Made by a program: the position numbers and the translations under genes. Positions 12,886-60,985 of a stretch of 64,000 bases of DNA are shown piece by piece; the stretch's first letter is position 1, and each line of letters opens with the position of its first letter. Where the stretch lies: positions 186,001 to 250,000 of the IMG/VR virus record IMGVR_UViG_3300023174_002543. One strand, 5' to 3'. Below the pieces are notes generated by a model that ran no database searches, was not told where the DNA came from, and was given only the letters and a program-made list of their open reading frames with translations.

Positions 12886-13325
12886 TTATTTTCTGATGGG
12901 TGTATAATCAACGTTTGGGGTGGGTGAATAATCTTTGGTAAAGCTATTACGCATCTCATCACCATACTTTAATGTGATATAACTAAAGAGTGTATCTTTA
13001 CCTTCATTTATTCCTATACGCAAATAGTTTAGCCACTTGATTTTTTCATGGATATGCTTTTTAAGATTGATATCTTTTAGTATATCATCAAAGTTATTTG
13101 ATTCACGGTAAAAAGTAATGTACTTCATTTTTTCCAAAGTATAAAGTTTATATAGTCTGTCTCTGATTCAAAATAGAATGTATATTTGCCGGGAAGTAAT
13201 CCTGCCATACCTTGTATATCATAACCCCAATCTGCAATGCATTGGTTTTGACACCAATTCATTATAGGTGCAAGCTGACCAAACTTAATGTCAATTTCAG
13301 TCTTGTACTGTGTGTTGGGTGACAT
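12886..13325 (-). CDS. Two small hypothetical proteins (12886-13128 and 13125-13325)
   Basis: Overlapping co-oriented ORFs ending F..I.LK(Y/W). Confidence 0.55.
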
Positions 13326-13815
13326 TGACTCCACTCTTATTTAAGAAATTTATACCATCATCGCTACGATAAGTGTTACGGTATAAAACGTTGTTAATAC
13401 CACTTTGGTAGATAAGTTTGGCACAGTCCAAACATGGAGCATGGGTAATAAACAAAGTAGCACCCACACCAGATTCGTTAGATTTAGCAAGTTTCGCAAT
13501 CGCATTCGTTTCAGCATGTAATACCTCGGGCTTAGTTTTTAGTCCGTAACGCACATCACGTTGGACACTATCGTGCCATTCTTCATACGGATACTTTTCT
13601 GCAAACTCATCTGGATCCAACCATCCGCCTGCTCCAGGATCATAAACTTTGTCTTCACAGTTATTATCCCAACCACTGGGCATACCGTTATACCCAATAG
13701 ATATGATTCTATCATCTTTAACAATGATGGCACCAACTTTCAATCGTATAGCATGGCTTAACTGACTTGTACGTTCGGCTACATCCATGAAATAGTTAAT
13801 AAACTTTTGTTTCAT
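13297..13815 (-). CDS. dCMP deaminase
   Basis: GYNG.P, HAETNA and PCLDC zinc-deaminase motifs. Confidence 0.92.
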   Translation of the reverse strand: MKQKFINYFMDVAERTSQLSHAIRLKVGAIIVKDDRIISIGYNGMPSGWDNNCEDKVYDPGAGGWLDPDEFAEKYPYEEWHDSVQRDVRYGLKTKPEVLHAETNAIAKLAKSNESGVGATLFITHAPCLDCAKLIYQSGINNVLYRNTYRSDDGINFLNKSGVNVTQHTVQD

Positions 13816-20819: not shown

Positions 20820-20822
20820 ACT

Positions 20823-21826: not shown

Positions 21827-21893
21827 TTTAAACCCTTAAAGTTAGTAGTGCATATTTCTATACACTACTTTTATTTACAATAAATGTATTATA

Positions 21894-22340: not shown

Positions 22341-22346
22341 GTTTTT

Positions 22347-22394: not shown

Positions 22395-22408
22395 ATCTTT
22401 ATAGAATC

Positions 22409-24340: not shown

Positions 24341-24345
24341 TTTTT

Positions 24346-24406
24346 TCTCCTTTAAAAAGCAAGATGTTTATATAGACCTGACTATCAGCGTCCATATGTA
24401 TTTATA
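24346..24406 (-). promoter_or_regulatory. dnaK leader: TATAAATA late promoter plus a ROSE-like SD hairpin
   Basis: TATAAATA at 24399-24406; hairpin at 24375-24392; UCUUGCUU...AAGGAGA. Confidence 0.6.
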
Positions 24407-24446
24407 TATTTTACATTGTTGCGTAAAATATTTGTATATTATTGGG

Positions 24447-24665
24447 TTAATATTGTTTAGGGGGAAGTGTTTGGTCACGCAAATACTTTTTCCAACGACT
24501 CTTTGCTTTACTCTTATCTATCTTACGCTTAGTAGTGGGTTTTACAAATTCTTGTCTATCACGGATTTCTTGGATTAATCCTGACTCTAAGATTTTTTTT
24601 TTGAATTTACGTAATGCTTTTTCAACATTTCCGTCTGGTCCTACTATTACTTTTCTTCCTGGCAT
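24447..24665 (-). CDS. rpsU: Ribosomal protein bS21
   Basis: VEKALRKFKKK...G...E.R.RQ.FVKPT..RK. Confidence 0.9.
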   Translation of the reverse strand: MPGRKVIVGPDGNVEKALRKFKKKILESGLIQEIRDRQEFVKPTTKRKIDKSKAKSRWKKYLRDQTLPPKQY

Positions 24666-46758: not shown

Positions 46759-47868
46759 CTATTTACTGAAAACGTAAATGCCTTCAAATTTTTCTCTACC
46801 TTCATTACGAAAGTTACCAACACCTGGTCTAGTGTTTAATATCATTTTGATTGTCTTACGATATTTGAATCCTAAACTTTCAGCAGTACTTATCCATTTA
46901 TCAACTACAAAGAACTCGCCACCTATACCCTTGTAGTCAGCAATGTTAGTAGCAAACAATCCATCAACATTCAACCCATTATATATATTACGCATAGTTG
47001 GGACTACATAACCATCAAACCATTCATCCAATGTAGTATAACGATTCATACATTGTGTTGGTTCGTCACAATACTTTTCTAAGTTAAAGTAAGGCGGACT
47101 ACTGAATGCTAAGTCAATATTTTCTGGTTGATAGTCTTCACTAACAGTATTGTATAACTCCACATCATTGTCACAAAACTTTTGTAGATAGTTAAGATAT
47201 TTAAATGTTTCTGTATTTGGGTCTATACCTATATAGGTATAGTGCATATTACTAAGACTAGTGCCTAGCATTCGTCCACCGTATCCTGAACTATAATCAT
47301 ATATACGACCGAACATAGTAGGGCATAGATGTTCAATGATACTACGTGCGTTTAATGATTTAAAGTTTTGTATGTTCTCACCGGTTACTAACTCTAATGC
47401 AGTTCTAATTAATGTAGGATAAACTAATCTTGCGCCACCACTACGATGTTCAAAGCAAATACGAATGGCTCTATCTAGTTTAGTATCGTTTAAGAACCTA
47501 TCACGCAAACTATTACCTGCACGACCTTTTGGTAATGCAGTTAACATATTAGGGAATAAGAAACGATTGATTGTCTGTCCACCATTGTTACCTAAAGGTA
47601 GTATATCGTTATGTATCTCGTTATACTTTCTATCTTTTAGTGTGTTAATTTCATCTATTAATCCCTGTTCGGTGTAGTAATACATTGGAACAAGATTAAT
47701 ACTACGATATAGTTCTAGTATTTGTTTACGTACACCTTCTGGATCTTTAGCATAAACTTCTTCTGTAAACTTATCAAACTCAGGGTATAGGCTTTCATAA
47801 CCAGTAAACTTGTCACCGTGTATATGTTCAGGCTTTACACCCCAAATTTGATATAGTTCATCTATCAC
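46759..47868 (-). CDS. DNA amino-methyltransferase (N4-mC/N6-mA type)
   Basis: SAM motif YDYSSGYGGR, GIDPN, catalytic FSSPPYF. Confidence 0.82.
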   Translation of the reverse strand: MIDELYQIWGVKPEHIHGDKFTGYESLYPEFDKFTEEVYAKDPEGVRKQILELYRSINLVPMYYYTEQGLIDEINTLKDRKYNEIHNDILPLGNNGGQTINRFLFPNMLTALPKGRAGNSLRDRFLNDTKLDRAIRICFEHRSGGARLVYPTLIRTALELVTGENIQNFKSLNARSIIEHLCPTMFGRIYDYSSGYGGRMLGTSLSNMHYTYIGIDPNTETFKYLNYLQKFCDNDVELYNTVSEDYQPENIDLAFSSPPYFNLEKYCDEPTQCMNRYTTLDEWFDGYVVPTMRNIYNGLNVDGLFATNIADYKGIGGEFFVVDKWISTAESLGFKYRKTIKMILNTRPGVGNFRNEGREKFEGIYVFSK

Positions 47869-48869
47869 TTACAATATTTTTCGTAAAAGTCAATGCTAGC
47901 CAAGTTCTTAGCCTTAGACTCGCACATGATATCAAAGTTCTCATTGAAACTAGCCGCCCACTTGTTAACTTCAACATTCCAGTAGTAGTCACTATGGGCA
48001 CGTAGTTTTTGTTTGTTATGACCTTCAGTTAATAGTTGTGCATGATTGGGTCTAGTCTTTGTATCATGACCAACTAGAATGTCTTCACGACTAACGCTAT
48101 AGTGGAGAGTAGGACGCATTCCGCGCCAACTATCAATAACACGAATAACCCTAGAGTCCAAAGGGTCGATGTATTCACCTTCTCGGATCCAATGATGATG
48201 TATGTCAAGAACAATAGGCACCAAATCGGAAAGCTGCAAACAAGTATCCAATCCATGACTCATCTCCTCGTTCTCTATAGTTAAACAATTACGTGCCTCG
48301 GGACTTAGGCGGGTATATGCTTTACGAATACCATCAGGACCTTGACGACCACTAATATGTACATTGATTTTCATGTCTTGAAATTTACGACCATAGCCCA
48401 TCCAGCGAGCCATATCACAATGATATTCAAATTCACGTATGCTATTAGTAACAACTTCTTCACGTTCGCTTGCTAGTACAACAAACTGGTCAGGGTGAAA
48501 ACTAACACGAATGTCATTAGCACGTGCAGTCTCACCTAATGGTGCAAACCATTTAGACAACATATTTTGTACGTCAGATGATTGCCAGAAGTAAAGATAA
48601 TCGGGGTGCGTATAGAAACTAAGCATATCGCTAGTTAGTCGTAACATACGTAGTTCAGGAGGAAGTGTTGCAACTTTCTTAATCAATGCATGTGTGTTAA
48701 GAATATTTTTCTTAGCCACTTCAATGATTTTTTCTTCAACCATTTGCTTGTTATTGCGTTTTGCCCATGCCATTGTAGTGCCACCGGTGTTAAGACCCTC
48801 AGCACTAACAATCTCACCTTTTTTATTAATCTCTGCCCATTTGCAAGCAAAGCCTACACGTTTAGTCAT
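47865..48869 (-). CDS. uvsE: UV-damage endonuclease
   Basis: GFAC, R..SD, SFHPDQF..L.S, IEN, D.HHH, HYS, AHSD and E.K.K motifs. Confidence 0.92.
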   Translation of the reverse strand: MTKRVGFACKWAEINKKGEIVSAEGLNTGGTTMAWAKRNNKQMVEEKIIEVAKKNILNTHALIKKVATLPPELRMLRLTSDMLSFYTHPDYLYFWQSSDVQNMLSKWFAPLGETARANDIRVSFHPDQFVVLASEREEVVTNSIREFEYHCDMARWMGYGRKFQDMKINVHISGRQGPDGIRKAYTRLSPEARNCLTIENEEMSHGLDTCLQLSDLVPIVLDIHHHWIREGEYIDPLDSRVIRVIDSWRGMRPTLHYSVSREDILVGHDTKTRPNHAQLLTEGHNKQKLRAHSDYYWNVEVNKWAASFNENFDIMCESKAKNLASIDFYEKYCK

Positions 48870-48918
48870 AAAGTATTACCGTTATAGTTAGTCATACTGT
48901 AGTGTAGCATAGTTGTGA

Positions 48919-49749
48919 TTATTTGTCAATCTTTAATAAATCCTTAATATCATAAAGATGTTTCATGTACTCACTAACATTTCCCAACACACTAACTGCA
49001 ATATCACCTTCTCTACGAGGTCCATACTTAACGTCAATGGTAAGGTTGTTAACTGTTTCAAATATACTAACCATTTCTTTAACGGTATAACCTACACCAT
49101 GACCCAAACATTCAATATTATTGCTAGGTGTTTCTATGGCAGTACGCAATGCATCGCATATTTCATTCACGTGTACATAATCACGTACACAAGTACCATC
49201 CCAACTTTCATTGTAGTTTTTCCCAAAGATAGTAAATTCACCAGTGTCTTTTGCCTTGAATAAATTGTACATTAATCCATCAGGGTTAGTAGGTGCAAAT
49301 CCATCACTACCAATTACATTGTAAAATCTAAAGATAGTATATGGTATGTTTCTGTATTCACACATTTCTTTAATACAATCTTCAGCCGCTTTCTTACTTG
49401 TACCGTATGCGCTTTCGCATTTTTCGGCTGCACCTGTACTAGCAAAAATAAAATTATCTGTATCTACCCAAGTTAATAGATTCAATGAACCAATCATATT
49501 AGTCAAATAATAATCAGTGGGTGTCCTTTGACTTTCACCTACATTGACTAATGCGGCTAGATGTATAACTGCATCAAAATGTTCTTTCTTTAATGTAAAC
49601 TGGTTTTTGATATTTCTATTAAAGTGTCTACTAACTTTATATTGAGGATCTTTGATATCTAATCCCACAATCTCATACTCACCATCTAACATCTTACAAA
49701 GATGTGATCCTATGTAACCACTGTTACCTGTTATTAATATTTTTTTCAT
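48919..49749 (-). CDS. NAD-dependent nucleotide-sugar epimerase (GalE-like)
   Basis: TGNSGYIG, HLAA...VGES, YGTSK, RFYNV and DGTCVRDYVHV motifs. Confidence 0.9.
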   Translation of the reverse strand: MKKILITGNSGYIGSHLCKMLDGEYEIVGLDIKDPQYKVSRHFNRNIKNQFTLKKEHFDAVIHLAALVNVGESQRTPTDYYLTNMIGSLNLLTWVDTDNFIFASTGAAEKCESAYGTSKKAAEDCIKEMCEYRNIPYTIFRFYNVIGSDGFAPTNPDGLMYNLFKAKDTGEFTIFGKNYNESWDGTCVRDYVHVNEICDALRTAIETPSNNIECLGHGVGYTVKEMVSIFETVNNLTIDVKYGPRREGDIAVSVLGNVSEYMKHLYDIKDLLKIDK

Positions 49750-51083
49750 ACTAGTTCAAATAATCCTAATCCTGTTACTTCCTCTAATGGTTCATAGCTA
49801 GGATCCTTGGTTAGATAAGTTTCCTTGTCTGTATAGATTATACGATACTTGTGTTTATTTGTCAATACACTACGAATGTCATCAATGCAAATTAAACTAC
49901 GACCCAAATCTTTAATGTAATCACTATGTTTGACCGTAGTGTTCTCTAATATTTTGGCTGTGTTACTGTTTGATTGCTTTGGCTTAAACTCATTGAAACA
50001 TTCATTCCATTTATGAAATACATCTGATTCTAAATTTTGTGTATCTCGCAATGCATTTTTGTCATACCAAGATTTAGCAGTTGGGTAAGCGTGATATGCA
50101 TCCTTAACATCTTCTGCCATTTGTTTTTTATTAGTTACAAAGAAGAATCTACCTTTAAAATTATTAGTCCAACGTTGATTCTCTAAACAGAACGTGGGTA
50201 GTTGTGTAATCTGTTCATAGAAAGCCATACCATAACTCTCAACAATACTAGGATTGAATGCAACTCTTGCACTTGTAATGAAATCTACTTTTTCTTGACC
50301 AATAATACCTACTTTTATTTCATAAGGTACACCAATCTTCTTTAATCGTTCTTCAAATTTCTTAGCACCATTTGCGCTAGTCATTACCTTAGCGGGTAGT
50401 TTAGTTTGTTCAATCAGTTCTAAGAATAGTTCAGGGTTTTTGCCTTCTTCCCAACGACCAACAAACAATATACCCTCACGTGGCTTGTGATGTTCTTCTA
50501 GCAATCCTTGTTCTGTAATTGGAATAGGTAAATGATAAGATGATTCATCTAGGTTAAGCCAATTGTATTTGCTTTGTGTACCAACATATACACCGGGAGT
50601 ACTAAGTTGTTGACGCATCAACACATTGGTATTATATAAGAAAGGATTCTTTGTATCCTTAAAGATTTGACTTTCTAAATGAGTATATGCAATAACTTGA
50701 ATACAATCTTCAAGTCCCATTGTAATAGCAACCTGCACTGTTTCGTATGTGTTACAAATGAATGCATCATATAAATTATGTTCTAATGCTTCTACAATAC
50801 TATTTCGGAAGTTAGCCATACGTTCATAGTTGAATGTATCACCATACATAAAGATATTACTATGTGTTGTATAGGCTAATGACACTTTAGGATATATAAT
50901 ATTTGCCTTCAATGATTTAACAAACTCATTGTCTTTGGGTTCTTTATCAGTGATTATATCAACTTTAATGTTATGGCTATCCATCAATTCGCAAAAACTC
51001 TTTGCAAATTGCCCTATACCACCATGAGGTATAAGAGTTTGATAACTTACTAAGAAGCCAATTCTTTTATCATATGTTCTCAT
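49746..51083 (-). CDS. GT-B (GT4-like) glycosyltransferase
   Basis: GGIG, LFVGRWEEGK and PSIVESYGMAFYE motifs. Confidence 0.85.
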   Translation of the reverse strand: MRTYDKRIGFLVSYQTLIPHGGIGQFAKSFCELMDSHNIKVDIITDKEPKDNEFVKSLKANIIYPKVSLAYTTHSNIFMYGDTFNYERMANFRNSIVEALEHNLYDAFICNTYETVQVAITMGLEDCIQVIAYTHLESQIFKDTKNPFLYNTNVLMRQQLSTPGVYVGTQSKYNWLNLDESSYHLPIPITEQGLLEEHHKPREGILFVGRWEEGKNPELFLELIEQTKLPAKVMTSANGAKKFEERLKKIGVPYEIKVGIIGQEKVDFITSARVAFNPSIVESYGMAFYEQITQLPTFCLENQRWTNNFKGRFFFVTNKKQMAEDVKDAYHAYPTAKSWYDKNALRDTQNLESDVFHKWNECFNEFKPKQSNSNTAKILENTTVKHSDYIKDLGRSLICIDDIRSVLTNKHKYRIIYTDKETYLTKDPSYEPLEEVTGLGLFELV

Positions 51084-51624
51084 TGTTTTAATTTCCAAAT
51101 AATATGTTCATGTTTATCATGCCATTTACATTCAAAGACAGTGGCACCAGGTCCAGTATATAATGCAGTAAGTTTATAACCAAACTCTAACCATATAGGT
51201 TTATCTGATATGTTACACTTTACTGGAAACCAAGCAAATTTTAACTCTGTACCTACTAATTTATTATAAAACATTTCGTCTAGTGTCGTTGGTCTATACC
51301 CCGTGCCCATCATTTTTTACCACCAGTGACCCATTTAGTGTATGCTTCCACAAATAGTTTTTCACGTTCAGGATTATTAAGTTGTTTTACGTGTTCAACG
51401 AATCTAGGTACACCTCGATCGGCTGAGATTATCTCTAACAATCCTACATCAAGTTCAGTCAATGCAATTTTATTAGTAATATCAATAAACTTACCACTTG
51501 AATCTTTTTCCTGAGCAACCACTACATCAAGTTCAACCGTAACACCGTGAATCGTGCCTCTACCGGTGAGTGGCACTTTCATTACTGCACCCATGTCATT
51601 GTCTAAAATGCGTGTACTAATCAT
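51080..51624 (-). CDS. Two small hypothetical proteins (51080-51313, 51310-51624)
   Basis: Coupled ORFs. Confidence 0.5.
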
Positions 51625-51638
51625 TTAATATTTTCTTG

Positions 51639-52271
51639 TTATTCATTCATTCTCCATTTGTTCTCTGGTAATCCATAGTCCCACTTTGAATCCATTTCAA
51701 CATTCCATCTAGTAGTAGCAACATTGAAATCTGGTATCTTCATTTCTTTAGGGTTAGATGCCGGTTCTAAAATAACAATACGATTATTTGGTTGTGCAGC
51801 AAACTGTCCATTATCGCACTTGATAAAGTTAAAGGACTTATGATCCTCAACGTCTTCACTGTGTCCACAATCAAGAGTATTAAAATCGGGATGTGAGGAA
51901 TCAACAGTAAAAAGATATTCACCCTCTAACCATGAACCATCTTTCATTTTAATTTTACATCTCATATTTGCTATCATTGCTTTTTTAATTACAGTGATAT
52001 CATAAGACATGCTGTTCCATAATTGTAAAAAATCTAAAGGATACGGATCACCTTCTATAGGTTTCCAGCAGTAAGCATGTAATGGAAGTTTATCATATAA
52101 CGCACCATAGTGATTTAAGTACGATTCAATTCTAAATGCTTGGCTACGTTGAGACTTTATTGATATCCACCAACATGGTTCAAGTTCCCCTTGACCCTTC
52201 TCAAAATCATACAAAAATTCTCTGCGAATAAAACATTTTACTGGTGGCAAGTTTGCTACTAAAAAACTCAT
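51639..52271 (-). CDS. Conserved phage protein of unknown function
   Basis: G.Y.FTVD, EDHK and GQFAAQPNNR motifs seen in aquatic phages. Confidence 0.7.
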   Translation of the reverse strand: MSFLVANLPPVKCFIRREFLYDFEKGQGELEPCWWISIKSQRSQAFRIESYLNHYGALYDKLPLHAYCWKPIEGDPYPLDFLQLWNSMSYDITVIKKAMIANMRCKIKMKDGSWLEGEYLFTVDSSHPDFNTLDCGHSEDVEDHKSFNFIKCDNGQFAAQPNNRIVILEPASNPKEMKIPDFNVATTRWNVEMDSKWDYGLPENKWRMNE

Positions 52272-52272
52272 T

Positions 52273-52923
52273 TTAATATTTTCCTGATGCCAATACTATT
52301 TTACAAATATGTTCTAATCGTTCAATGTGTTCATAGGCACGCCATGGACTTGTGTCAATAGCAACTACTCCATGTCCTTTGATACCTACAATGTCATATG
52401 CGATGTTTCCATAGTCATCTAATTCTAATCTATAGTGACACTGGTCAGCAAGTTCTTGGCTAATTGGTTTCACATCTCCTACATTGGGCGCTACCTTTGT
52501 ATAACGATTAAGTTCTGGAAAACTATCACTAATTGTACTTAAATCAATACCGGCATGCATCGCAGCAATACAATATGTAGGATGAACGTGTACGACTACC
52601 CGCACATCGTCTGTATGTTGTCCCATTTCTTTTTGCAATCCAAAGTGTAAGGGGAGTTCTCCGCTGGGCTTTAAGTTAGCACTTATATCGGTATAAAATT
52701 CTTCCTGCCAAGATTTTGTTAAGAAAGGCGGGGAGGCACTGATATTATCAACTAATTTAATTTTCTTAAATTGATCGGGCTGTAATGTTTGCTTACGTAC
52801 ACCACTCGGGGTGATGTAGAAATGGTCACGGTCATGATGCCGAATACTCACATTGCCGTCACGACTTGTAATCCAATTACGCTTGTAGGCGTCTTCTAAT
52901 ACTTCACATATTGTTTCTAACAT
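52273..52923 (-). CDS. Class II aldolase/adducin-family metalloenzyme
   Basis: GNVS.R, ITPSG, PSGE..LH, HVHP and GHG motifs. Confidence 0.88.
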   Translation of the reverse strand: MLETICEVLEDAYKRNWITSRDGNVSIRHHDRDHFYITPSGVRKQTLQPDQFKKIKLVDNISASPPFLTKSWQEEFYTDISANLKPSGELPLHFGLQKEMGQHTDDVRVVVHVHPTYCIAAMHAGIDLSTISDSFPELNRYTKVAPNVGDVKPISQELADQCHYRLELDDYGNIAYDIVGIKGHGVVAIDTSPWRAYEHIERLEHICKIVLASGKY

Positions 52924-52926
52924 ATT

Positions 52927-53100
52927 TTAGGTTCCCCATTTTACGTTGAGCCATACTCGTTCATGTATGTAATGTAATACAGTTAACACTATATTAGCCC
53001 ATATTGCCCCACTCCACCCTGCCCAAATTGCAGTTACGCATGTAGCTATTATACGCCATACTATGGCTCTTACTATTGTTCTTTTGTGTGTTTCTGACAT
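52927..53100 (-). CDS. DUF2061-like small membrane protein
   Basis: ET..RT...AI.WR...Y.HER.W....WG. Confidence 0.7.
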   Translation of the reverse strand: MSETHKRTIVRAIVWRIIATCVTAIWAGWSGAIWANIVLTVLHYIHERVWLNVKWGT

Positions 53101-53957
53101 TAAGTTCCCCACTCGTTTTTGAATAGTGGCACTTGTAATCTATCACTGTACCGCCAGCCTTTTTGCATTGCCATTTCTGCCACTGCACGATTGTTAAGGG
53201 AATACACCCGCTCAACACCACCGACAGGCATAAGATACACGCTACCTTTAAAACCATTTTTACGGTACTCATTTACTGCTCTTTCTGCATCTTTTACATC
53301 ATGTTCAGTAGCAACTACCAATTTTAAATAAGTATGACCAACATCTTGGTATTGACACACAACATCTGGTTTGATAGCATCACTCCAACTTTCACCACTG
53401 CAAGGTAGTTTAGCACTTACACTAAATGTTAATGCATTGTATCCTCGTTCTTTATTGCCTAGAGTCCAGTTCAATAAATAGTGTCTGAAATCAGGTGTAA
53501 GAAGTTGTGTACCGTTTGTTTCAAAGGTCAATTCTTTGAGTGATTTCATCTTATCATTTTGTAATAAATCTATAAATGATTTTTGCCATCCGAGAAGAGG
53601 TTCACCGCCTGTAATAACTAGATGTTCATCTATCCAACGCTCATGAGGGAGCATATCCATAATTCCATCTACGATAGCATCAGTAGAGATAACAGCACTA
53701 AGATGTTTAAACCTAGGATCCCAACTAGCATAACTATCGCAACCAGTACTGACTAAAGGTAATTCCTTATAATTATTATATAAGTGTACTACTTGTGCAA
53801 TTTCTTCTGCCTCAGCACTTAACATACCACCGGGCATACCAAATCCCGCACATTTAAAATTACAACCGAATGTACGAAGGAATACGCTAGGCACACCCAT
53901 GTATCTACCTTCACCTTGTATACTATAAAACAACTCTGCGATTTTAATTTTGCTCAT
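53100..53957 (-). CDS. queE: 7-carboxy-7-deazaguanine synthase (radical SAM)
   Basis: [19 protein letters not shown]...CDS (insertion before the third Cys), TGGEP, ETNG. Confidence 0.9.
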
Positions 53958-54138
53958 TTTTAATCCATAGTTCTAATGCTTTTGCCGGATAAATCTGAAC
54001 AGAGCCTTTTTCAGTATCGCTTTCAACTGCATAGCCTTCAGGTGTCAATTCAGTTGAATATGTACCAACAACAACAACACCGTGCCATTGTGACCCGGAA
54101 ACTTTTTTTACTAAATCACCTAATTTAAATTTACTCAT
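53944..54138 (-). CDS. dfrB: Type II (R67/DfrB-family) SH3-fold dihydrofolate reductase homologue
   Basis: [17 protein letters not shown]...[14 protein letters not shown]....[10 protein letters not shown] is co-linear with the R67 core, including VQIY. Confidence 0.88.
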
Positions 54139-54713
54139 CTTGTTCCAACCAATTTGTTACTTGATCCTCTGCATCTACTTGGCTGGATGCATATACGGTA
54201 AATGTTGCAACACCATTGCGGCATCTAACATTGAACGGGACAGTACCATTAGGTAACCATCCGGTTTCTACTTCACGTTTTACTTCATAGAATTGCATGT
54301 CACTAGATTTAATTCTACCGAATAATTCATCGGCTATTTGTTTTGCTGTTTTCATTATTGATCCTTACCAATGTCTTATCACACCTGCTATGATAAAAAA
54401 GTTTGTTATTACATATATTAACACAATACAGGTGCGGATGCAAGCAATACGGTCAGCTTCCTGATCTGTATCACCTGACTTCTCTCCTAAACTTTTAGCC
54501 CAAAGTCTCCACATTTTTTTCATTTTTTACCTGTGGATAATAATATGTACAATCACTACGGCGTATGTCCCAACTGCTGCCTAGACCACCTAGGTGTTGT
54601 AGGGCCCATCTAGCACGGTCATGTGCTTGTGGCACTGCCATTGGCCAGGGCGTATTGTTGCGGCACTGAATGTACTGCTTTAGATAAACATAACTTTGTT
54701 CACGTGCCCACAT
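54131..54713 (-). CDS. Three small ORFs (54131-54355; 54365-54514 MWRLWAK.LGEK membrane peptide; 54495-54713)
   Basis: 54365-54514 translated manually; it matches a familiar small myovirus protein motif. Confidence 0.55.
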
Positions 54714-54839
54714 GTCTGCCCCTAATTTTACGCCACACTATTTCAAATGTGTCAGGCCTGATAAACACTTCCCATCCTTTGGGAATATGCTCAGGAAAAA
54801 GACTTGCCTTACCGTTACTGTGTTTATACAGTTTCATTC

Positions 54840-55289
54840 TTAACCTTCGTAAATAGCACTATTAGCACCGTGTTCTGCACATTCTACTTTAACGCAATAG
54901 CAACGGTTATTGGTATTAGCTCTAATTAAATTGTCAGCAAATGTGAAAGCATGTTGGGCAAACTTCTCTGCACCAACACCATCAAAAATTCTAATCTCTG
55001 CTAGATCCAATGCTTCTAGTTCTTTAAATTTAGATAGATGTGGATCTGATTTATCCAGTGCCAGCTTATGGTCGAAATGGTCTTCTAGCCATGCCTTAAG
55101 CATTTTAAGTCCACCGAAGTCTACTGCCCAATTTTTATCATCTAGTGTGTCACATCCAAATGTAAATGTAAAGGCTAGACTGTAACCATGTAGTAAATGA
55201 CAATGACTGTGGTCTGCATTGGGTTGTCTAAATACAGCACTTAGTCCAATGTTGTGTCCGTAATGTTTTGTTGAATAATATTTTGCCAT
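54840..55289 (-). CDS. queD: 6-carboxytetrahydropterin synthase
   Basis: HC..LHGY, W.VDFG.LK, FDH and E...NSA motifs. Confidence 0.9.
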   Translation of the reverse strand: MAKYYSTKHYGHNIGLSAVFRQPNADHSHCHLLHGYSLAFTFTFGCDTLDDKNWAVDFGGLKMLKAWLEDHFDHKLALDKSDPHLSKFKELEALDLAEIRIFDGVGAEKFAQHAFTFADNLIRANTNNRCYCVKVECAEHGANSAIYEG

Positions 55290-55292
55290 GTT

Positions 55293-55360
55293 AATTCTCC
55301 TATGTTAATTATAGCATAGGACGCAGAATTTGTATACCGGGATGAGCCCATAAGGCCGGT
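55293..55360 (-). promoter_or_regulatory. Structured queD leader: SD-sequestering hairpin with an extended -10 in the loop
   Basis: AAUUC..UCCUAUG pairs with CAUAGGA-GAAUU; TGcTATAAT overlaps the loop. Confidence 0.55.
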
Positions 55361-55365
55361 TATCT

Positions 55366-55833
55366 TTATTTACCTTTTTTGGCTTCTGCCTGATAAACAC
55401 GTTTACGTAAACTTGTACTACTGAAACTATGGTCACGCCCATTAAATACAATTTCAATGCCACGCTGAAAACATGCTTGATCTCCAGTAAATTGTTTACC
55501 TTCATATTCAATACCTAGTATACGAACATTAAGAGGTAATATCAATAACAAGTCAACCAAGTCTTGTTCAGTTTGATATACAACTACCTCATCAACATAG
55601 CGGCATGCACTTAGTTGAATTTGTCGTTCTACAATGCTTTGAATAGGTTTGTTCTTTGTATCAGGTCTATCAAGTGTTGGATCAGTTTGTAATCCCGCAA
55701 TCAAATAATCACAATGATTTTTTGCCTCACTAAGCATTGCAATATGACCTGCATGTAACATATCAAAAGTACTAAAGGTAATTCCAATTCGTTTACCATC
55801 TTTGTTAAGTTTTTTAATTTTATTGAATATCAT
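55366..55833 (-). CDS. TagD-like cytidylyltransferase (HxGH nucleotidyltransferase)
   Basis: TFD.LHAGH, R...L.A..YVDEV and SST motifs. Confidence 0.88.
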   Translation of the reverse strand: MIFNKIKKLNKDGKRIGITFSTFDMLHAGHIAMLSEAKNHCDYLIAGLQTDPTLDRPDTKNKPIQSIVERQIQLSACRYVDEVVVYQTEQDLVDLLLILPLNVRILGIEYEGKQFTGDQACFQRGIEIVFNGRDHSFSSTSLRKRVYQAEAKKGK

Positions 55834-56559
55834 TCTAACTCCGTAATTTCTTCTACTATTGGATCCGGTTCACCTTCTTCACTAAACCCATATGTAACTT
55901 CATATTCTCTACCTATATAATGAAATGTTTCAGTAAAGGTTCTTTGGTTGTTACTAGAATCTGTTGGACCAATCAATGCTAAAACTAATAGCATGTGTTC
56001 ACGTTCAGTCCCCAGTAAAGTTCTGCGTTTTTTCATGCCTATACTTTTTAAAAATTCAAGTGCTTCCTCTTGATTTCTGAAGGGTGAACGATTCATCTTT
56101 TTAATATCTCAATTATCTTTTCTTGTTCTTTTAGTTTGAGCCATTCTTCTTCTGGTGCAAATGTACTACATTTTCTTAATGATTCATCAATCAACCATTT
56201 AAGTTCGTATAGTTCTTGTTTAACACCCCAAGACACAAATCCATCATTACGTGGATTTGTGCATTCATAACGCATGGCCCATATGCCATGTTTAATAGCA
56301 TTTAAGTCCCAGTCTTTACGAAAGCCCATTATTCAACTCCCATACGGTCTTTAATGTAATCACTTATCCTACTAGAATGACTACGAATTTCTTTATCATT
56401 GAGAGATTGTATATTATTGTTAAAGGTTAATGCATGTTTGGCACATTCCTGAACAATCAACTCGGCGAACTTAGACATAAAGGCAGTTTGTTCTTCCCAA
56501 CTATCGCCAAAGTTTGATTTGGCCGCCTCAGACCAAAGTTGTTTAACTCGTTCGTTCAC
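55830..56559 (-). CDS. Three small hypothetical proteins (55830-56096, 56093-56329, 56329-56559)
   Basis: Coupled ORFs. Confidence 0.55.
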
Positions 56560-57239
56560 TTACAACCTTGTCGGGCAATTTGATAGAATTCAGCACGTGC
56601 AGCTGAATCAGTTTTGAACCCGCCACCTAATCGTGTAGTTACTGTTGAACTACCTGTATCCTCAACACCACGTGACTTTACACAATAATGTTGGGCGTCA
56701 ATCATAACTGCGACATCCTCTGTCTCTAAGATGAACTGTAAGGTGTGAAATACTTGTTCAGTTAGCCGTTCCTGTATTTGTGGACGCTTGCTGAAATATT
56801 CTACAATCCTGTTAATCTTACTAAGCCCTAAGACTTTATCTTTAGGGACATAAGCTACTGTCGCTAATCCATCTATGACCACAAAGTGATGTTCACAGTT
56901 AGATTGAACACTTACGTTACGCTCACATACCATTTCGTTGTACTTCATCTTATTATCGACTGTTGTACATTTTGGAAATGCCTCGTAATCTAAACCCCAG
57001 AAAATCTCATTCACATACATCTTAGCTACTCGCTTTGGTGTATCAATCAGACTATCATCAGTTAGGTCTAAACCTAATACTTCCATGATGCCTTGAAAAT
57101 GACTTTCAATTAACTCAATCTTACCCTTACGATCCATATGACCTGTATAAGTAGTTGGTGTTTCAACTCCCATCTTAACTAGATGTTCGTGTACTTTTAA
57201 TCCTAATTCAGGATCCGTTTTTGTTTTATTATAACTCAT
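56556..57239 (-). CDS. folE: GTP cyclohydrolase I
   Basis: TPKRVAKM, SNCEHH, GLSK..R, RPQIQERLT and H.C...RGV motifs. Confidence 0.96.
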   Translation of the reverse strand: MSYNKTKTDPELGLKVHEHLVKMGVETPTTYTGHMDRKGKIELIESHFQGIMEVLGLDLTDDSLIDTPKRVAKMYVNEIFWGLDYEAFPKCTTVDNKMKYNEMVCERNVSVQSNCEHHFVVIDGLATVAYVPKDKVLGLSKINRIVEYFSKRPQIQERLTEQVFHTLQFILETEDVAVMIDAQHYCVKSRGVEDTGSSTVTTRLGGGFKTDSAARAEFYQIARQGCK

Positions 57240-57298
57240 AGATAACCTTCCTTTGTGATGGTTTTGTTTTGATATTTTGTAACCGTTGTGTTACATAC

Positions 57299-57853
57299 TT
57301 ATTTATCTGTTTCTTCAATACTATTAAAAATATTCGCATTTGATGATGGACCAAACGGCCATGCAGCATTTGGATTTAACGGGGGACGTTCTTTTAATTC
57401 GATATTCTCTTTGATTATTGTTCCGTAATCATCTGTATAATCAATTTGAAATGGTGCAGCAATCATAACATATTCGTCTTCAAATTGCCAATCGTGATTA
57501 CCTTCATGTAACCAGGCAGCACCACCTCGTTCGTATTCATCATCTTCATCACCATCAAAGTAACAAGTCTTGATACGTTCTTGTTCTTCTTCAGTGATAT
57601 CATCACTAAATTCCCAATCAACATTAATGCTATCATCAAATTCAGTGCCCCAGCCTATGTCAGTTTTGCAATAAGCAAGATTAGTATCTTTATATGGAAG
57701 GTCAGTTTCTTCTTCAACAAACCCTTGTCCCCAACGATAAAGTTCTTCCATATTAAACCAGCTAGTAGTACCATCTGGATTTTCACGATACATTTCTACT
57801 CGCCAATAGACGCTTTTCTTTTCTAACGGTTTAATACAATAAACATTACCCAT
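57299..57853 (-). CDS. Acidic hypothetical protein, paralogue of 59031-59603
   Basis: KP..KKS...RWG..F; C-terminal AWPFGP. Confidence 0.65.
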   Translation of the reverse strand: MGNVYCIKPLEKKSVYWRVEMYRENPDGTTSWFNMEELYRWGQGFVEEETDLPYKDTNLAYCKTDIGWGTEFDDSINVDWEFSDDITEEEQERIKTCYFDGDEDDEYERGGAAWLHEGNHDWQFEDEYVMIAAPFQIDYTDDYGTIIKENIELKERPPLNPNAAWPFGPSSNANIFNSIEETDK

Positions 57854-57854
57854 G

Positions 57855-58631
57855 TTATTTCCTTATACGATTGTTGGCATTTTCAACTGCTTCTAGTATA
57901 CCAATGCTATTATCAGTTCGTTGCAATAAATCAATTATAGCACGAACATCTTTAGGAAAGCAAGCACCACCGTACCCTAAACTTCCATCTGGTCCAGGTA
58001 CATCTAAATGGCTATCACCCATTCTAGTATCTGTTTTCAACATACCTGTAAAGTGTTCCCAATTTCCACCTAGACTATCAACTAATATCTTATATTGATT
58101 CATCATAATAACCTTGTTAGCTAGGAAGGTATTCATAAAATACTTTACTAAACTAGCAGTTATCAAATCAGTAAACAAAATAGGTCCTGTAGTATTGATA
58201 GCACTTTGCGCTAACATATCTAATAAAAATAAATTGTCACCAGTGCCACCTATAAAGATGAATTTTGGATTAAGATAATCATGTATGGCGGTTTTTGCTA
58301 CAAGAAATTCTGGTATGTGCCATAGATTTTCAACACCCTCATACTGTTTCCAGAATACAGGGTCAGTTGTACTTTTTACAACAATATGTCCTTTATACGA
58401 TGCTAATTTATTTAGGGTAGTTCTTACTATAGAAGTATCACAACTACCGTCGGGATTACTTGGTGTAGGTACACATACAAAAATTACATGCGGCTCACTA
58501 TCAAGTAATTCTTGTATTGATACTGAACCACTAATAATCGGATCGTGAAATAATACAGTATTGTCAGTGCCTAACCAGCTAGCCTGTACTGCTTTACCCA
58601 CATATCCTAAACCAACAATACCCACTCGCAT
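57855..58631 (-). CDS. ugd: UDP-glucose/GDP-mannose 6-dehydrogenase family (lacks the C-terminal domain)
   Basis: GLGYVG, CVPTP, KST, PEFL, KY..N and GYGGACFPKD (catalytic Cys) motifs. Confidence 0.88.
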   Translation of the reverse strand: MRVGIVGLGYVGKAVQASWLGTDNTVLFHDPIISGSVSIQELLDSEPHVIFVCVPTPSNPDGSCDTSIVRTTLNKLASYKGHIVVKSTTDPVFWKQYEGVENLWHIPEFLVAKTAIHDYLNPKFIFIGGTGDNLFLLDMLAQSAINTTGPILFTDLITASLVKYFMNTFLANKVIMMNQYKILVDSLGGNWEHFTGMLKTDTRMGDSHLDVPGPDGSLGYGGACFPKDVRAIIDLLQRTDNSIGILEAVENANNRIRK

Positions 58632-58633
58632 TA

Positions 58634-58822
58634 TTAGGCCTTAGCTTCTTTACGTGCGGCTTTCTCAGCAGTAATTTCATTACGGCGTGCTTTGATTGCT
58701 TTAGCCATTTCTGCTAATGCTTTGCGGGCACGTGTGCCTGCTGCCGCGTTACCTTTTTCAAATTTTTCATGTTCTGCTAGGTAGGCTTCTAGTTGTGTGT
58801 TAATATCATTATGTGCGCTCAT
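58634..58822 (-). CDS. Hc1/histone-H1-like small DNA-binding protein
   Basis: KFEKGN.AAGTRARK.L..M....K..R motif. Confidence 0.75.
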   Translation of the reverse strand: MSAHNDINTQLEAYLAEHEKFEKGNAAAGTRARKALAEMAKAIKARRNEITAEKAARKEAKA

Positions 58823-59603
58823 AGTTTCTCCTTTGATTTACGCTTTGGTTTTGCCTCAGTAATTGTTACCGATGCAATTGCTTCTCTTACTTCTTTTAAT
58901 AGTTGTTCATCATCCCAAACAAGTTCAGTTGAACCATCCTCAAAAGTTTTTACAGTCAAATGCGTACCTTGATTAATCAAGGGCCAGCCACCTGATGGTA
59001 CGTTTTCTGTTTTCTTTTTACGTGTTGCCATTAATCTTCCTCTTTAGGACCTTCTTTTGGTCTATCAAAGGGCCATTTGACTGTTTCAATAGTAGACGCA
59101 AGTTCGGGTCCAAACGGCCACTGAGTGGGTTTTTCTAGCATTGCTCTTGCCTCAGCCTCAGAAGTTATAACCTCTAGTTGATTGTTAATTTCTTCTTCAG
59201 TCTGACCTGTGTGTATGATTTGCTCAGTATCACCATCAACACGTTCAATGATTAAATCACAATCAATAATCATTTCGGTATCACCTTGTGACCAATCATG
59301 TTCCTCTAAATCGTAATATGAATTTTCTTCTAAGAATTCTTCGAGCCATTCTTCTAGGTCTTCATCATCAACAGTGACTTCTTCCCAGCAACCATCATTA
59401 GTTTCTACTAACTCAGTTTCATAATCACAATTATAGATATCCACACCTGCTTCAATATCAGGGGGATTATCATCATCTGTATAAACAATAAATTCTCCCC
59501 AACGCCAGCCCGTTTCTGCTGTGATAGTTGCACCATCTTTGTGATAGTAATTACGTTCAATAATTGATTTTTTCCACTGGGGTTTTACGCTCCATTCAGC
59601 CAT
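58819..59603 (-). CDS. Small protein (58819-59031) and acidic protein with WPF motifs (59031-59603)
   Basis: Coupled ORFs. Confidence 0.6.
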
Positions 59604-59604
59604 T

Positions 59605-60780
59605 TTAGTATTTTCCTTCTCTAGTATGTTTACGATAATCTGTACTCATTCTAAGCATTGTATCACCTTTGCCTTCAAGTACGTCAATGATTCGGTCAAT
59701 CGTGCCGTCGTTGTAGTCACTAATCTTACCTATATGTTCACTCGGTTTCGCTAATAACTTTTCTAATTTGTCTAGTGCATCTTCTATTGACCAAGGAACA
59801 TATAATCTGGAATAATCATTGGCAAAAGTTTCAGGAAAACTCCGGTAAGCAGGATAAAGAACATTACAACCCAAAGCATCTGCTTCCGAGACAGTATTAC
59901 TGACCCAATCTTGTAACGCACAATTAAATACAACACGACTATCATTAACAATATTGTAATAATCATTTTTATCTAAATCCTCATTTAACGTTAATAGCCC
60001 TTTTGATTGTAAATCATGTGTTCGTTGCATGTAACTAAGATTGTTGCTTTTTAGTTTTGCACCACTACATACACAAAATTCTACATATGTATTTGGATGG
60101 CGCACGTTCCATGCTTCAATGAGGTCCATATAAAAGTCTGGTTGTTTCTCTTGGTCCCATCTTGCACTAAACACAACACGATGTTTGCGTTCATTGAATG
60201 GTTTGATAGAACTAACCCGAGACCTCACCTCTTCTTTACCGAATGCAAGACCTGATATATTATAGATTGGGGCTTCCCAGCCTGCAATCTTCATGTGCAT
60301 TACCATTTCTTCATTCGTAGCGAGTACACCATCGACAAAGCTATCCACCATCTTTTCATAATGCCCCATAAATTTAGACATATTCCATACGTGAACAAAA
60401 TCATCAGGATCAATGGATTGAGCAAGACAGCGAACAAAAATCCTAGGACGATTAATGCTGTCGATTTGATTAAGTATATAAGGAAGGCTCTCGATACCGG
60501 GTTGAAACATGTCCTCAAAGTAGATAACATCTTCATTATTAAGTTCTCCTGCTTTCATCATACGAATCAAATTCATTAGTTGCGACATACCGAAATATGT
60601 GCGACCATGTGCATCTAATACTTGCCCAGTAACAATCGCTTGGTCGTTACTTAGTGTTTCACCGGGGACAATGACATAATCAATGCCCCGTTTCTCAAAG
60701 ACAACACGATTCCACTCTTGTAATTGTAGAGTGTACCTTGCTTTATAAGGCTCTAGCCCCATATAGTAAAATTTACGCAT
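59605..60780 (-). CDS. GT-B glycosyltransferase
   Basis: F.ARW..EK.P, and QDWVSNT..EA...G....P...SFPE (variant E-x7-E region). Confidence 0.8.
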   Translation of the reverse strand: MRKFYYMGLEPYKARYTLQLQEWNRVVFEKRGIDYVIVPGETLSNDQAIVTGQVLDAHGRTYFGMSQLMNLIRMMKAGELNNEDVIYFEDMFQPGIESLPYILNQIDSINRPRIFVRCLAQSIDPDDFVHVWNMSKFMGHYEKMVDSFVDGVLATNEEMVMHMKIAGWEAPIYNISGLAFGKEEVRSRVSSIKPFNERKHRVVFSARWDQEKQPDFYMDLIEAWNVRHPNTYVEFCVCSGAKLKSNNLSYMQRTHDLQSKGLLTLNEDLDKNDYYNIVNDSRVVFNCALQDWVSNTVSEADALGCNVLYPAYRSFPETFANDYSRLYVPWSIEDALDKLEKLLAKPSEHIGKISDYNDGTIDRIIDVLEGKGDTMLRMSTDYRKHTREGKY

Positions 60781-60985
60781 GTCTACGTGCGTCCTCATCC
60801 CAACTGTTCTTTGCTGGCTTTCCAGTCATATACTTGTTGAATTGCCTAAATACATAACTACGCATATCGTACAATGTTGCCTCATCATACTTATAACCAT
60901 AATCTACGCAAAATTCTAAATACTTTTCTAAATCTTCAAAAATTTGACGAACTCTGTGGTTAGGTTGAAATGATTGTTTTGCCAT
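60773..60985 (-). CDS. Small conserved hypothetical protein
   Basis: IF.DLE.Y..FC..YGY.YDE..LY. Confidence 0.6.
   Translation of the reverse strand: MAKQSFQPNHRVRQIFEDLEKYLEFCVDYGYKYDEATLYDMRSYVFRQFNKYMTGKPAKNSWDEDARRHA

What the first reader, a model, noticed from the sequence alone, without database searches (positions are those of the whole stretch)
53944..54138. R67/DfrB trimethoprim-resistance homologue between queD and queE: clue to the native function of the family
SEEN: a 64-aa ORF overlapping the queE start, co-linear with the R67 DHFR core. It keeps the K32-, W38- and VQIY-equivalent residues, has W45->T and H62->E substitutions, and has one extra Val inside a (GTT)4 run. KNOWN: DfrB enzymes are homotetrameric SH3-fold NADPH reductases, best known from integrons, inefficient on dihydrofolate and of unclear origin. 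H62 lies at the tetramer interface. INFERENCE: its position in a pterin/deazapurine pathway suggests the natural substrate is a pterin intermediate, for example re-reducing oxidised CPH4 for QueE. It also suggests environmental phages could be a reservoir of dfrB-like resistance genes.
Basis: partly seen in the sequence, partly recalled or inferred. Interest (0 to 1): 0.82.

Follow-up and report, generated by a model that had tools for sequence, protein, structure and literature searches.

The report
R67-type reductase gene in jumbo phage
A freshwater jumbo phage carries a real, strongly conserved 64-residue relative of the plasmid trimethoprim-resistance enzyme R67/DfrB, but it is an optional gene cassette lodged in a pterin/deazapurine gene cluster, not a fixed part of that pathway, so it says little about what the family was originally for.

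Summary
ORF 53944-54138 (-) is a DfrB/R67-type SH3-fold protein: Pfam DHFR_2 E 3e-20, about 57% identical to R67 DHFR, model rmsd 1.0 A to 1VIE. K32, W38 and S65-VQIY are kept, W45 is T, H62 is E, and there is one extra Val in a (GTT)4 run. It overlaps the stop of a 74-aa ORF and the start of the QueE-like gene.

About 50 IMG/VR contigs of one jumbo-phage lineage keep the gene within 8 kb of FolE, PTPS or QueE-like genes, at five or more positions. None of the 79 closest QueE-like loci has it. A roughly 92%-identical relative lacks exactly this gene. No pterin genes lie within 5-8 kb of the homologue in the eight isolated-phage contexts inspected (26 records hold one), in about 30 IMG/VR contigs of other lineages, or in 76 bacterial loci.

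The lineage copy is under strong purifying selection (dN/dS about 0.02). E at position 62 and a non-Trp at 45 are the majority states. The extra Val is unique, yet identical in two independent studies.

Phage DfrB homologues, one conferring trimethoprim resistance, are already published. Most likely this is an accessory NADPH-dependent dihydrofolate/dihydropterin reductase. The pterin-repair idea remains a low-probability, testable option.

The parts
53944..54138 (-). DfrB/R67-type SH3-fold reductase homologue, 64 aa, stand-alone core without the N-terminal tail of the plasmid enzymes
   Evidence: PF06442 E 3.3e-20. R67 DHFR PDB chains E 9e-16. NF000331 trim_DfrB scores 82.7 bits, below its cut-off of 137. 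phrog_31682, function unknown. AF2 model pLDDT 85, TM 0.86-0.94, rmsd 1.0 A to 1vie/2rk1. dN/dS about 0.02 in the lineage.
54067..54078 (-). (GTT)4 run encoding V21-V24; holds a one-codon insertion found in no other homologue examined
   Evidence: Relatives read ACA GTT GTT, GTT ATT GTT or GTT GTT GTG at this place. The insertion column is occupied only by the window in 85 and 32 aligned sequences. Contigs of runs X1, X3 and X2 (a different study) are identical over it.
53944..53957 (-). 14-nt overlap of the DfrB-like stop with the QueE-like start
   Evidence: Sequence AAAAATGAGCAAAATTAA. Suggests translational coupling (inference).
54131..54138 (-). 8-nt overlap (ATGAGTAA) of the 74-aa ORF's stop with the DfrB-like start
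   Evidence: In relative L022 the same junction joins the 74-aa ORF directly to QueE.
53100..53957 (-). QueE-like radical SAM protein, 285 aa
   Evidence: phrog_2076 QueE-like, E 8e-50. Matches five NCBIfam QueE models, all far below cut-off. 47% identical to Synechococcus phage BUCT-ZZ01 and 34% to KVP40-like phages.
54840..55289 (-). PTPS / QueD-like T-fold protein, 149 aa, with CxxxHGY in place of CxxxHGH
   Evidence: PF01242 E 5e-13. phrog_2389 QueD-like E 4e-40. TIGR03367 scores 34 bits against a cut-off of 89. Motif seen.
54131..54837 (-). Four small accessory ORFs (74, 52, 72 and 45 aa) between the PTPS-like gene and the DfrB-like gene
   Evidence: Only the 52-aa ORF has a PHROG, of unknown function. 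Their presence and order vary among relatives.
55366..55833 (-). Nucleotidyltransferase (RfaE domain II / cytidylyltransferase-like), part of the conserved core FolE-NT-PTPS-QueE
   Evidence: Core order seen in L119, L130, L131, L148, L156, L164.
56556..57239 (-). GTP cyclohydrolase I (FolE)
   Evidence: PF01227 E 1e-60. NF006824 scores 324 bits against a cut-off of 202.
13297..13815 (-). dCMP deaminase (context: the phage reshapes pyrimidine deoxynucleotide pools)
   Evidence: PF00383 E 5e-21.

Best explanation
The ORF encodes a functional DfrB-type reductase. Four copies of the 64-residue SH3-like barrel are expected to form the R67-style homotetramer. Its single central pore would be lined by S46-V47-Q48-I49-Y50 with K12 at the mouths. 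There NADPH and the 7,8-dihydropteridine ring of dihydrofolate (or a related dihydropterin) stack, and a hydride passes to C6.

In this phage the gene is an optional cassette of about 181 nt. It is one of several small genes inserted between the PTPS-like and QueE-like genes, is probably co-transcribed with them, and is translationally coupled to its neighbours. Its most likely use is to keep reduced folate or pterin available during infection, independently of the host's FolA. It is not a required step of the FolE-PTPS-QueE pathway.

Shown: homology, conserved key residues, predicted fold, strong purifying selection, operon-like packing, presence/absence polymorphism, and restriction of the synteny to one lineage.

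Inferred: tetramer formation, catalytic activity, substrate and physiological role.
For: - Family membership by sequence and fold.
- Invariant K12, W18, Y27, T32-S40 and G45-P51 across 32 phage and bacterial homologues, one of them essentially R67 itself (L236).
- In PMC9835603, homologues with the same conserved set (VQIY, K32, W38; W45 variable) formed tetramers, reduced DHF, or gave trimethoprim resistance. This includes the Vibrio-phage protein DfrB-H4, which has TEK at the H62 position as the window does.
- dN/dS about 0.02 at dS about 1.1 among 43 lineage copies.
- Accessory status: 0 of 79 nearest QueE-like loci carry it. Run X5 holds a contig that skips 53939-54119. The gene has near-repeat starts at both junctions.
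- The window encodes dCMP deaminase and a deoxynucleotidase, so the phage handles dTMP precursors.
- A Vibrio phage carrying an R67-family gene plus ThyA has been read the same way (PMC13749740).
Against: - No thymidylate synthase or canonical DHFR partner was found among the window ORFs scanned. The other 300 kb of the contig could not be read.
- The window's allele has a unique extra Val in strand 2, between the W38 and W45 equivalents. Its effect on the tetramer is unknown; pLDDT dips to 75 just before it.
- The protein lacks the N-terminal tail that PMC9835603 says is needed for expression of DfrB1 in E. coli.
- In several arrangements the gene directly follows the PTPS-like gene, even where FolE and QueE are more than 8 kb away. 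This leaves room for a pterin-specific role.
Confidence: 0.55

Rival explanations
1. One reading: the enzyme serves the deazapurine pathway by re-reducing oxidised 6-carboxy-tetrahydropterin (6-carboxy-7,8-dihydropterin back to CPH4) for QueE, and this reflects the family's native substrate.
For: - Within one jumbo-phage lineage the gene always lies within 8 kb of FolE, PTPS-like or QueE-like genes, in at least five arrangements. It often directly follows the PTPS-like gene or directly precedes QueE.
- It is translationally coupled to QueE in the window.
- In PDB 2RK1 only the pterin ring of DHF is ordered (PMC9835603), so a smaller pterin is sterically plausible.
- The phage also carries a superoxide dismutase, a hint that oxidative damage matters to it.
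Against: - 0 of 79 nearest QueE-like loci have the gene, including six with the identical cluster core.
- A relative about 92% identical lacks exactly this gene.
- No FolE, PTPS or QueE lies near the homologue in about 30 IMG/VR contigs of other lineages, eight isolated-phage contexts or 76 bacterial loci.
- The whole region is shuffled; the aldolase, kinase and small ORFs also change place. The several positions can therefore stem from one acquisition plus local rearrangement.
- By established pathway knowledge, the QueD and QueE reactions need no NADPH-dependent pterin reductase.
- The 'QueD' here has lost two of three zinc histidines, so even the pathway's intermediates are uncertain.
Confidence: 0.12
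2. The SH3 tetramer has a native role in phages other than folate or pterin reduction, for example another NAD(P)H-dependent reaction or a binding or host-takeover function. On this view DHFR activity is a side property of the pore.
For: - In other phages the domain sits among early, replication or recombination genes, or near DNA methyltransferases (PMC9835603).
- It is fused to non-homologous extensions of 92-574 aa that have no Pfam domain.
- PHROGs lists its family as of unknown function.
- PMC9835603 describes the catalysis as proximity-based and the binding site as promiscuous.
Against: - Near-invariance of exactly the pore residues (S-VQIY, K32) over all lineages is what a conserved ligand-binding pore predicts.
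- Every tested homologue with these residues that expressed well reduced DHF or gave resistance (PMC9774602).
- No alternative ligand or partner is suggested by any data here.
Confidence: 0.2
3. The window's particular allele is impaired: the slipped extra GTT codon in a core strand has weakened folding or tetramer formation, so the gene is on its way to loss in this genome.
For: - The insertion is unique among more than 85 homologues.
- It lies in a homopolymeric codon run prone to slippage.
- A close relative has lost the gene altogether.
Against: - The same allele, identical over 1.4 kb, occurs in metagenomes of two different studies at depths of 52 and 13.
- The rest of the ORF is intact, with dN 0.009 against dS 0.69 to its nearest relatives.
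- The monomer model still superposes on R67 at 1.0 A.
Confidence: 0.1

Closest known systems
R67 DHFR / DfrB1 (type II, plasmid- and integron-borne trimethoprim-resistant dihydrofolate reductase; PDB 1VIE, 2RK1)
   Same: Same Pfam family, about 57% identity over the SH3 core, same predicted fold (rmsd 1.0 A). K32, W38, Y46, T51-S59, G64-P70 and the VQIY motif are conserved.
   Different: 64 aa, not 78, with no disordered N-terminal tail. W45->T, H62->E, K33->V, and one extra Val in strand 2. Scores below NCBIfam's DfrB resistance cut-off (82.7 against 137). Encoded in a 367-kb phage contig, not in an integron cassette.
DfrB-H3 (Pseudomonas phage PS-1) and DfrB-H4 (Vibrio phage 1.030.O), distant DfrB homologues characterised in PMC9835603
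   Same: Phage-encoded, with the same conserved residue set. DfrB-H4 shares TEK at the H62 position. Native function unknown.
   Different: Those are 167- and 218-aa multi-domain proteins lying near DNA methyltransferases. The window's protein is the bare SH3 core inside a FolE/PTPS/QueE-like cluster.
R67-family DHFR of Vibrio phage vB_ValP-R39Z (PMC13749740)
   Same: Phage auxiliary gene read as a DHFR that supports nucleotide synthesis.
   Different: R39Z also encodes ThyA. No thymidylate synthase was found in the 64-kb window.
Phage 7-deazaguanine clusters (FolE, QueD, QueE, QueC, DpdA; e.g. Enterobacteria phage 9g)
   Same: FolE, a QueD-like and a QueE-like gene are clustered.
   Different: No QueC or DpdA was detected in the window by tblastn from phage 9g. 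The QueD-like protein lacks two zinc histidines. The cluster core includes a nucleotidyltransferase and is surrounded by sugar-nucleotide enzymes and glycosyltransferases. No described deazaguanine cluster found in my paper searches includes a DfrB-type gene.

Membership tests
Pfam PF06442 DHFR_2 (R67-type dihydrofolate reductase family) | Sequence match above the curated gathering score | tested here: met
   72.2 bits against a cut-off of 25, E 3.3e-20.
Pfam PF06442 DHFR_2 (R67-type dihydrofolate reductase family) | SH3-like five-stranded barrel protomer | tested here: met
   AF2 model (pLDDT 85) has five strands. Foldseek top seven hits are all R67 DHFR, TM 0.83-0.94, rmsd 1.0 A. This is a predicted structure, not a solved one.
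Pfam PF06442 DHFR_2 (R67-type dihydrofolate reductase family) | Pore and binding residues: VQIY motif, S65, K32; interface residue W38 | tested here: met
   V47-Q48-I49-Y50, S46, K12 and W18 are present and invariant in 32 homologues.
Pfam PF06442 DHFR_2 (R67-type dihydrofolate reductase family) | Obligate homotetramer with a single central active-site pore | not testable with these tools
   Only monomers can be modelled here. A unique extra Val lies between the W38 and W45 equivalents.
Pfam PF06442 DHFR_2 (R67-type dihydrofolate reductase family) | NADPH-dependent reduction of dihydrofolate, insensitive to trimethoprim | not testable with these tools
   Needs an enzyme assay. Precedent exists for homologues in PMC9835603 and PMC9774602.
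Clinical DfrB resistance enzymes (NCBIfam NF000331 trim_DfrB) | Score at or above the curated cut-off of 137 bits | tested here: not met
   82.7 bits.
Clinical DfrB resistance enzymes (NCBIfam NF000331 trim_DfrB) | 78-residue protein with a variable N-terminal tail, carried as an integron or plasmid cassette | tested here: not met
   64 aa with the match starting at residue 3. Located in a 367-kb viral contig between phage genes.
Phage/bacterial 7-deazaguanine (CDG/preQ0) biosynthesis cluster, with the DfrB-like gene as a component | FolE, QueD and QueE present | tested here: inconclusive
   FolE is clear (324 bits). The QueD-like and QueE-like genes match PHROGs strongly but fall far below NCBIfam equivalog cut-offs. 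The QueD-like protein has CxxxHGY and lacks the first zinc His.
Phage/bacterial 7-deazaguanine (CDG/preQ0) biosynthesis cluster, with the DfrB-like gene as a component | QueC and a DpdA/TGT-type transglycosylase present | tested here: not met
   No hit in the window with phage 9g DpdA or Gat-QueC at E<=1. None appeared among the ORFs scanned with Pfam. The rest of the contig was not readable.
Phage/bacterial 7-deazaguanine (CDG/preQ0) biosynthesis cluster, with the DfrB-like gene as a component | The gene co-occurs with the cluster across relatives and across lineages | tested here: not met
   0 of 79 nearest QueE-like loci have it. A close relative lacks it. No FolE, PTPS or QueE lies near homologues in other phage lineages or bacteria.

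The most novel reading that the evidence does not exclude
In this freshwater jumbo-phage lineage the bare DfrB core has been recruited as a pterin reductase working with the unusual PTPS-like enzyme (CxxxHGY, two zinc histidines lost). It would reduce or salvage a dihydropterin intermediate of a GTP-derived deazapurine or pterin pathway. That would be the first physiological, non-resistance role assigned to a DfrB-type enzyme.
Probability: 0.12. Interest if true: 0.75.

Novelty: new member of a known kind. Interest (0 to 1): 0.4.

Why it matters
The origin and native role of DfrB enzymes are open questions (PMC9835603). This case adds three things:
- A large, strongly constrained environmental pool of minimal (60-72 aa) DfrB cores in freshwater phages.
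- A concrete natural presence/absence polymorphism.
- One lineage where the gene rides in a FolE/PTPS/QueE-like island.

The last point gives a cheap, testable substrate hypothesis. The comparative evidence, however, says the placement is lineage-specific and facultative, so it should not be taken as the answer to the family's origin. The resistance-reservoir aspect is already known.

Tried and rejected
- **Fusion partners.** Pfam scans of ten fused DfrB-domain proteins looked for a clue in the partner domains; none had another domain.
- **Neighbours elsewhere.** Pfam scans of conserved neighbours in other lineages gave only DUF3310, an Hjc-type resolvase, a PD-(D/E)XK nuclease and a terminase-like protein.
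- **ThyA, ThyX or FolA in the window.** None appeared among about 60 ORFs scanned. The remaining 300 kb of the contig is out of reach, so absence from the genome is not shown.
- **A DpdA candidate.** The 397-aa ORF 59605-60798 had a weak tblastn hit at E 3.7. Pfam points to a glycosyltransferase instead, so the idea was dropped.
- **Promoter and terminator scan of 52800-57600.** No excess over shuffles.
- **Literature on R67 activity with dihydropteroate or dihydrobiopterin.** Nothing relevant is in the library.
- **Assembly error as the source of the extra Val.** Rejected because three Logan assemblies from two studies agree. These are contigs, not raw reads, so minor (GTT)3 variants cannot be excluded.
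- **The antisense 50-aa ORF 53976..54128(+).** Dismissed, because the minus-strand frame carries the homology and the purifying selection.

Full report
**What is there.** On the minus strand, ORF 53944..54138 encodes 64 residues.
- It matches Pfam DHFR_2 (R67 dihydrofolate reductase) at E 3.3e-20, 72.2 bits against a gathering score of 25.
- It matches the PDB chains of R67 DHFR at E 9e-16 over residues 3-56.
- NCBIfam's resistance model trim_DfrB scores 82.7 bits, below its cut-off of 137. PHROGs puts it in phrog_31682, function unknown.
- An AlphaFold2 model built on 32 homologues (mean pLDDT 85) has five strands. It superposes on 1VIE, 2RK1 and five other R67 entries with TM 0.83-0.94 and rmsd 1.0 A; the next hits are generic SH3/chromo/PWWP barrels at E > 0.04.

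All are correct. Reading the HMMER alignment with R67 numbering: K32, W38, S65 and V66-Q67-I68-Y69 are kept; K33 is V; W45 is T; H62 is E; and one residue is inserted in WHG-VVVV-G. The four GTT codons are at 54067-54078. The ORF's stop overlaps the QueE-like start by 14 nt. Its start overlaps the stop of a 74-aa ORF by 8 nt.

**Is it a working gene?**
- Among 43 copies from the same phage lineage, the core has median dN 0.023 against dS 1.1, so dN/dS is about 0.02.
- Across 32 phage and bacterial homologues the invariant columns are V10, K12, G15, W18, G20, G25, Y27, T32-S40, G45-P51, A54 and L55. These are the R67 pore and interface positions.
- E at the H62 position, in the motif T-E-K/R-G, is the majority state. 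The R67-like A-H-P-G occurs in a minority.
- The Vibrio phage 1.030.O protein, which is DfrB-H4 of Lemay-St-Denis et al. 2023, has L-T-E-K-G. It conferred trimethoprim resistance up to 600 ug/ml in E. coli (PMC9835603).
- That paper also states that VQIY, K32 and W38 are conserved in all homologues. It adds that W45 is not conserved and can be substituted without significant change of structure or function.

**The extra Val.** It is not ordinary: the window alone has it among 85 aligned sequences. Relatives read ACA GTT GTT, GTT ATT GTT or GTT GTT GTG, so slippage in a GTT run is the likely origin. It is not an assembly error. Logan contigs of runs X1 (possibly the source sample), X3 (same study) and X2 (a different study) are identical to the window over 53171-54546 or over the run itself, at depths 52, 9.5 and 13. 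Its effect on the tetramer cannot be judged here; pLDDT falls to 75 in residues 11-20, just before it.

**The neighbourhood.** On the same strand, tightly packed, lie:
- FolE (56556-57239, 324 bits against a cut-off of 202);
- three small ORFs;
- a nucleotidyltransferase (55366-55833);
- a PTPS/QueD-like protein (54840-55289);
- four small ORFs;
- the DfrB-like gene;
- a QueE-like radical SAM protein (53100-53957);
- a class II aldolase-family protein, glycosyltransferases, an epimerase and UvdE.

The QueD-like and QueE-like genes match PHROGs phrog_2389 and phrog_2076 at E 4e-40 and 8e-50. Both fall far below every NCBIfam QueD or QueE cut-off. The PTPS-like protein, its orthologues in the whole lineage and that of Synechococcus phage BUCT-ZZ01 carry C-x3-H-G-Y where phage 9g QueD has C-x3-H-G-H. 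They also lack the first histidine of the 9g AGH motif. No QueC or DpdA was detected in the window with phage 9g queries. The label 'pterin/deazapurine cluster' is therefore fair, but its product is not established.

- IMG/VR holds 197 relatives of the protein; the best 80 were fetched.
- About 50 of these belong to one lineage, recognised by shared flanking gene clusters (family B DNA polymerase, FolE, nucleotidyltransferase, PTPS, QueE, glycosyltransferase, epimerase, UvdE). In them the gene lies within 8 kb of FolE, PTPS or QueE.
- Its position differs between sub-clades:
  - PTPS-DfrB-QueE;
  - PTPS-DfrB-orf52-orf74-QueE (L022);
  - orf74-DfrB-QueE (the window);
  - FolE-DfrB-x-nucleotidyltransferase-PTPS;
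  - ClpP..PTPS-DfrB with no FolE or QueE within 8 kb;
  - a position downstream of the polymerase module, 6-7 kb before FolE.
- The larger genes of the region (aldolase, kinase, orf210) and the other small ORFs change place as well. The region is generally plastic, so the several positions are not independent events.
- The other roughly 30 loci come from unrelated contexts. There the domain is often fused into proteins of 92-574 aa whose other parts have no Pfam domain. Their neighbours are DUF3310, a resolvase, a PD-(D/E)XK nuclease and a terminase-like protein. None has FolE, PTPS or QueE within 6-8 kb.
- A second scan seeded with the Vibrio-phage homologue added some 20 contigs not in the first set, all without such genes.
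- Twenty-six isolated phage records hold a homologue. The eight contexts inspected are replication, early or integrase regions, or lie near DNA methyltransferases.
- Seventy-six bacterial loci, mostly Burkholderiales, have almost no conserved neighbours and no FolE, PTPS or QueE within 6 kb.

**The reverse test.**
- The QueE-like protein has at least 599 relatives in IMG/VR.
- Of the 79 best non-self loci (70-78% identity, up to 10 kb each side), none carries a DfrB-like gene. This includes six with the same FolE (85-89%)-nucleotidyltransferase-PTPS-QueE core, in which PTPS is followed almost directly by QueE.
- In run X5, from a third study, a 3,279-nt contig about 92% identical to the window aligns to 53098-53938 and 54120-54851. 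It skips 181 nt, which is the ORF minus its 14-nt overlap.
- The gene's first 17 nt (ATGAGTAAATTTAAATT) and QueE's first 17 nt (ATGAGCAAAATTAAAAT) agree at 14 positions, giving a short direct repeat at both junctions.
- The gene is thus a cassette that comes and goes without disturbing the cluster.

**Interpretation.** The family assignment is secure. The most economical reading is an accessory DfrB-type NADPH-dependent dihydrofolate/dihydropterin reductase.
- For a folate role: the demonstrated activity of homologues (PMC9835603; PMC9774602); the phage's dCMP deaminase and deoxynucleotidase; and the published reading of an R67-family gene beside ThyA in Vibrio phage R39Z (PMC13749740).
- Against a folate role: no thymidylate synthase or FolA was found in the 64 kb that could be scanned.
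It is also contradicted as a pathway requirement by the many clusters that lack the gene.
- I rate the pterin-repair idea at about 0.12, a non-folate native role at about 0.2, and impairment of this particular allele by the extra Val at about 0.1.

**Novelty.** Phage-encoded DfrB homologues, their conserved residues, their tetramerisation and their resistance phenotype are published (PMC9835603). GenBank records already label several as R67 dihydrofolate reductase. My searches found no paper linking a DfrB-type gene to queuosine or deazaguanine genes. The lineage-specific synteny, the size of the freshwater phage pool and the presence/absence polymorphism are therefore small additions. I file it as a new member of a known kind.

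Noticed in passing
window 54840-55289; L007-L039 PTPS-like genes; L086:10652-11119: The PTPS/QueD-like proteins of this whole phage lineage and of Synechococcus phage BUCT-ZZ01 have C-x3-H-G-Y instead of the QueD motif C-x3-H-G-H. They also lack the histidine of the AGH motif seen in phage 9g QueD. Two of the three usual zinc ligands therefore appear to be replaced.
   Followed up: partly
window 53100-53957: In the QueE-like protein, C32-x3-C36 is followed by the next cysteine only at residue 73 (C-x3-C-x36-C). The usual compact radical SAM cysteine motif is not evident. It scores below all five NCBIfam QueE models.
   Followed up: no
window 47865-60798: The FolE-nucleotidyltransferase-PTPS-QueE core is embedded among sugar-nucleotide and glycosyl-transfer genes: epimerase/dehydratase 48919-49749, GT1-like 49746-51098 and 59605-60798, class II aldolase family 52273-52923, and an NDP-sugar dehydrogenase fragment 57855-58631 (258 aa, matching only positions 76-296 of a 413-position model). 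Relatives add an APS-kinase-like/nucleotidyltransferase protein. The product of this island is unknown.
   Followed up: partly
window 17660-25855: The phage encodes a chaperone/protease set: ClpP (17660-18265), Hsp20 (21894-22361), a full DnaK/Hsp70 (22409-24340, 854 bits, about 68% identical to proteobacterial DnaK) and ClpX (24647-25855).
   Followed up: partly
window 492-815, 4891-5445, 10127-10681, 13297-13815: Auxiliary genes: an IscA-like Fe-S assembly protein, Fe/Mn superoxide dismutase, NT5C-type deoxynucleotidase and dCMP deaminase.
   Followed up: no
window 54549-54711: Runs X1 and X2 each hold a second contig over this stretch (the 72-aa ORF region) with the same 12 substitutions, at depth comparable to the main form. 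A two-haplotype segment is thus shared by two studies.
   Followed up: no
L056, L065, L069, L074, L076, L077, L082, L083 (IMG/VR); L178, L181, L180, L235 (bacteria): The DfrB-like domain occurs at the N-terminus, the middle or the C-terminus of otherwise unrelated proteins of 140-574 aa that have no other Pfam domain. The L077 partner looks MazG-like by eye, but Pfam did not confirm this.
   Followed up: partly
L171-L246: Bacterial DfrB-like loci are concentrated in Burkholderiales (Variovorax, Polaromonas, Rhodoferax, Ramlibacter, Undibacterium) and have almost no shared neighbours. L236 (Ectopseudomonas oleovorans chromosome) carries a core essentially identical to R67.
   Followed up: partly
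window 51639-52271: The 210-aa ORF matches phrog_3704 (labelled ferredoxin) at E 6e-76 but has no Pfam hit. It moves together with the aldolase-family gene in relatives.
   Followed up: no
window 31687-33024, 45413-46330, 47865-48869, 2945-4945: ATP-dependent DNA ligase, a NUMOD3-containing (homing-endonuclease-like) protein, UV endonuclease UvdE, and a LysM plus chitinase-class-I-like protein. No tRNA genes were found in the 64 kb.
   Followed up: no
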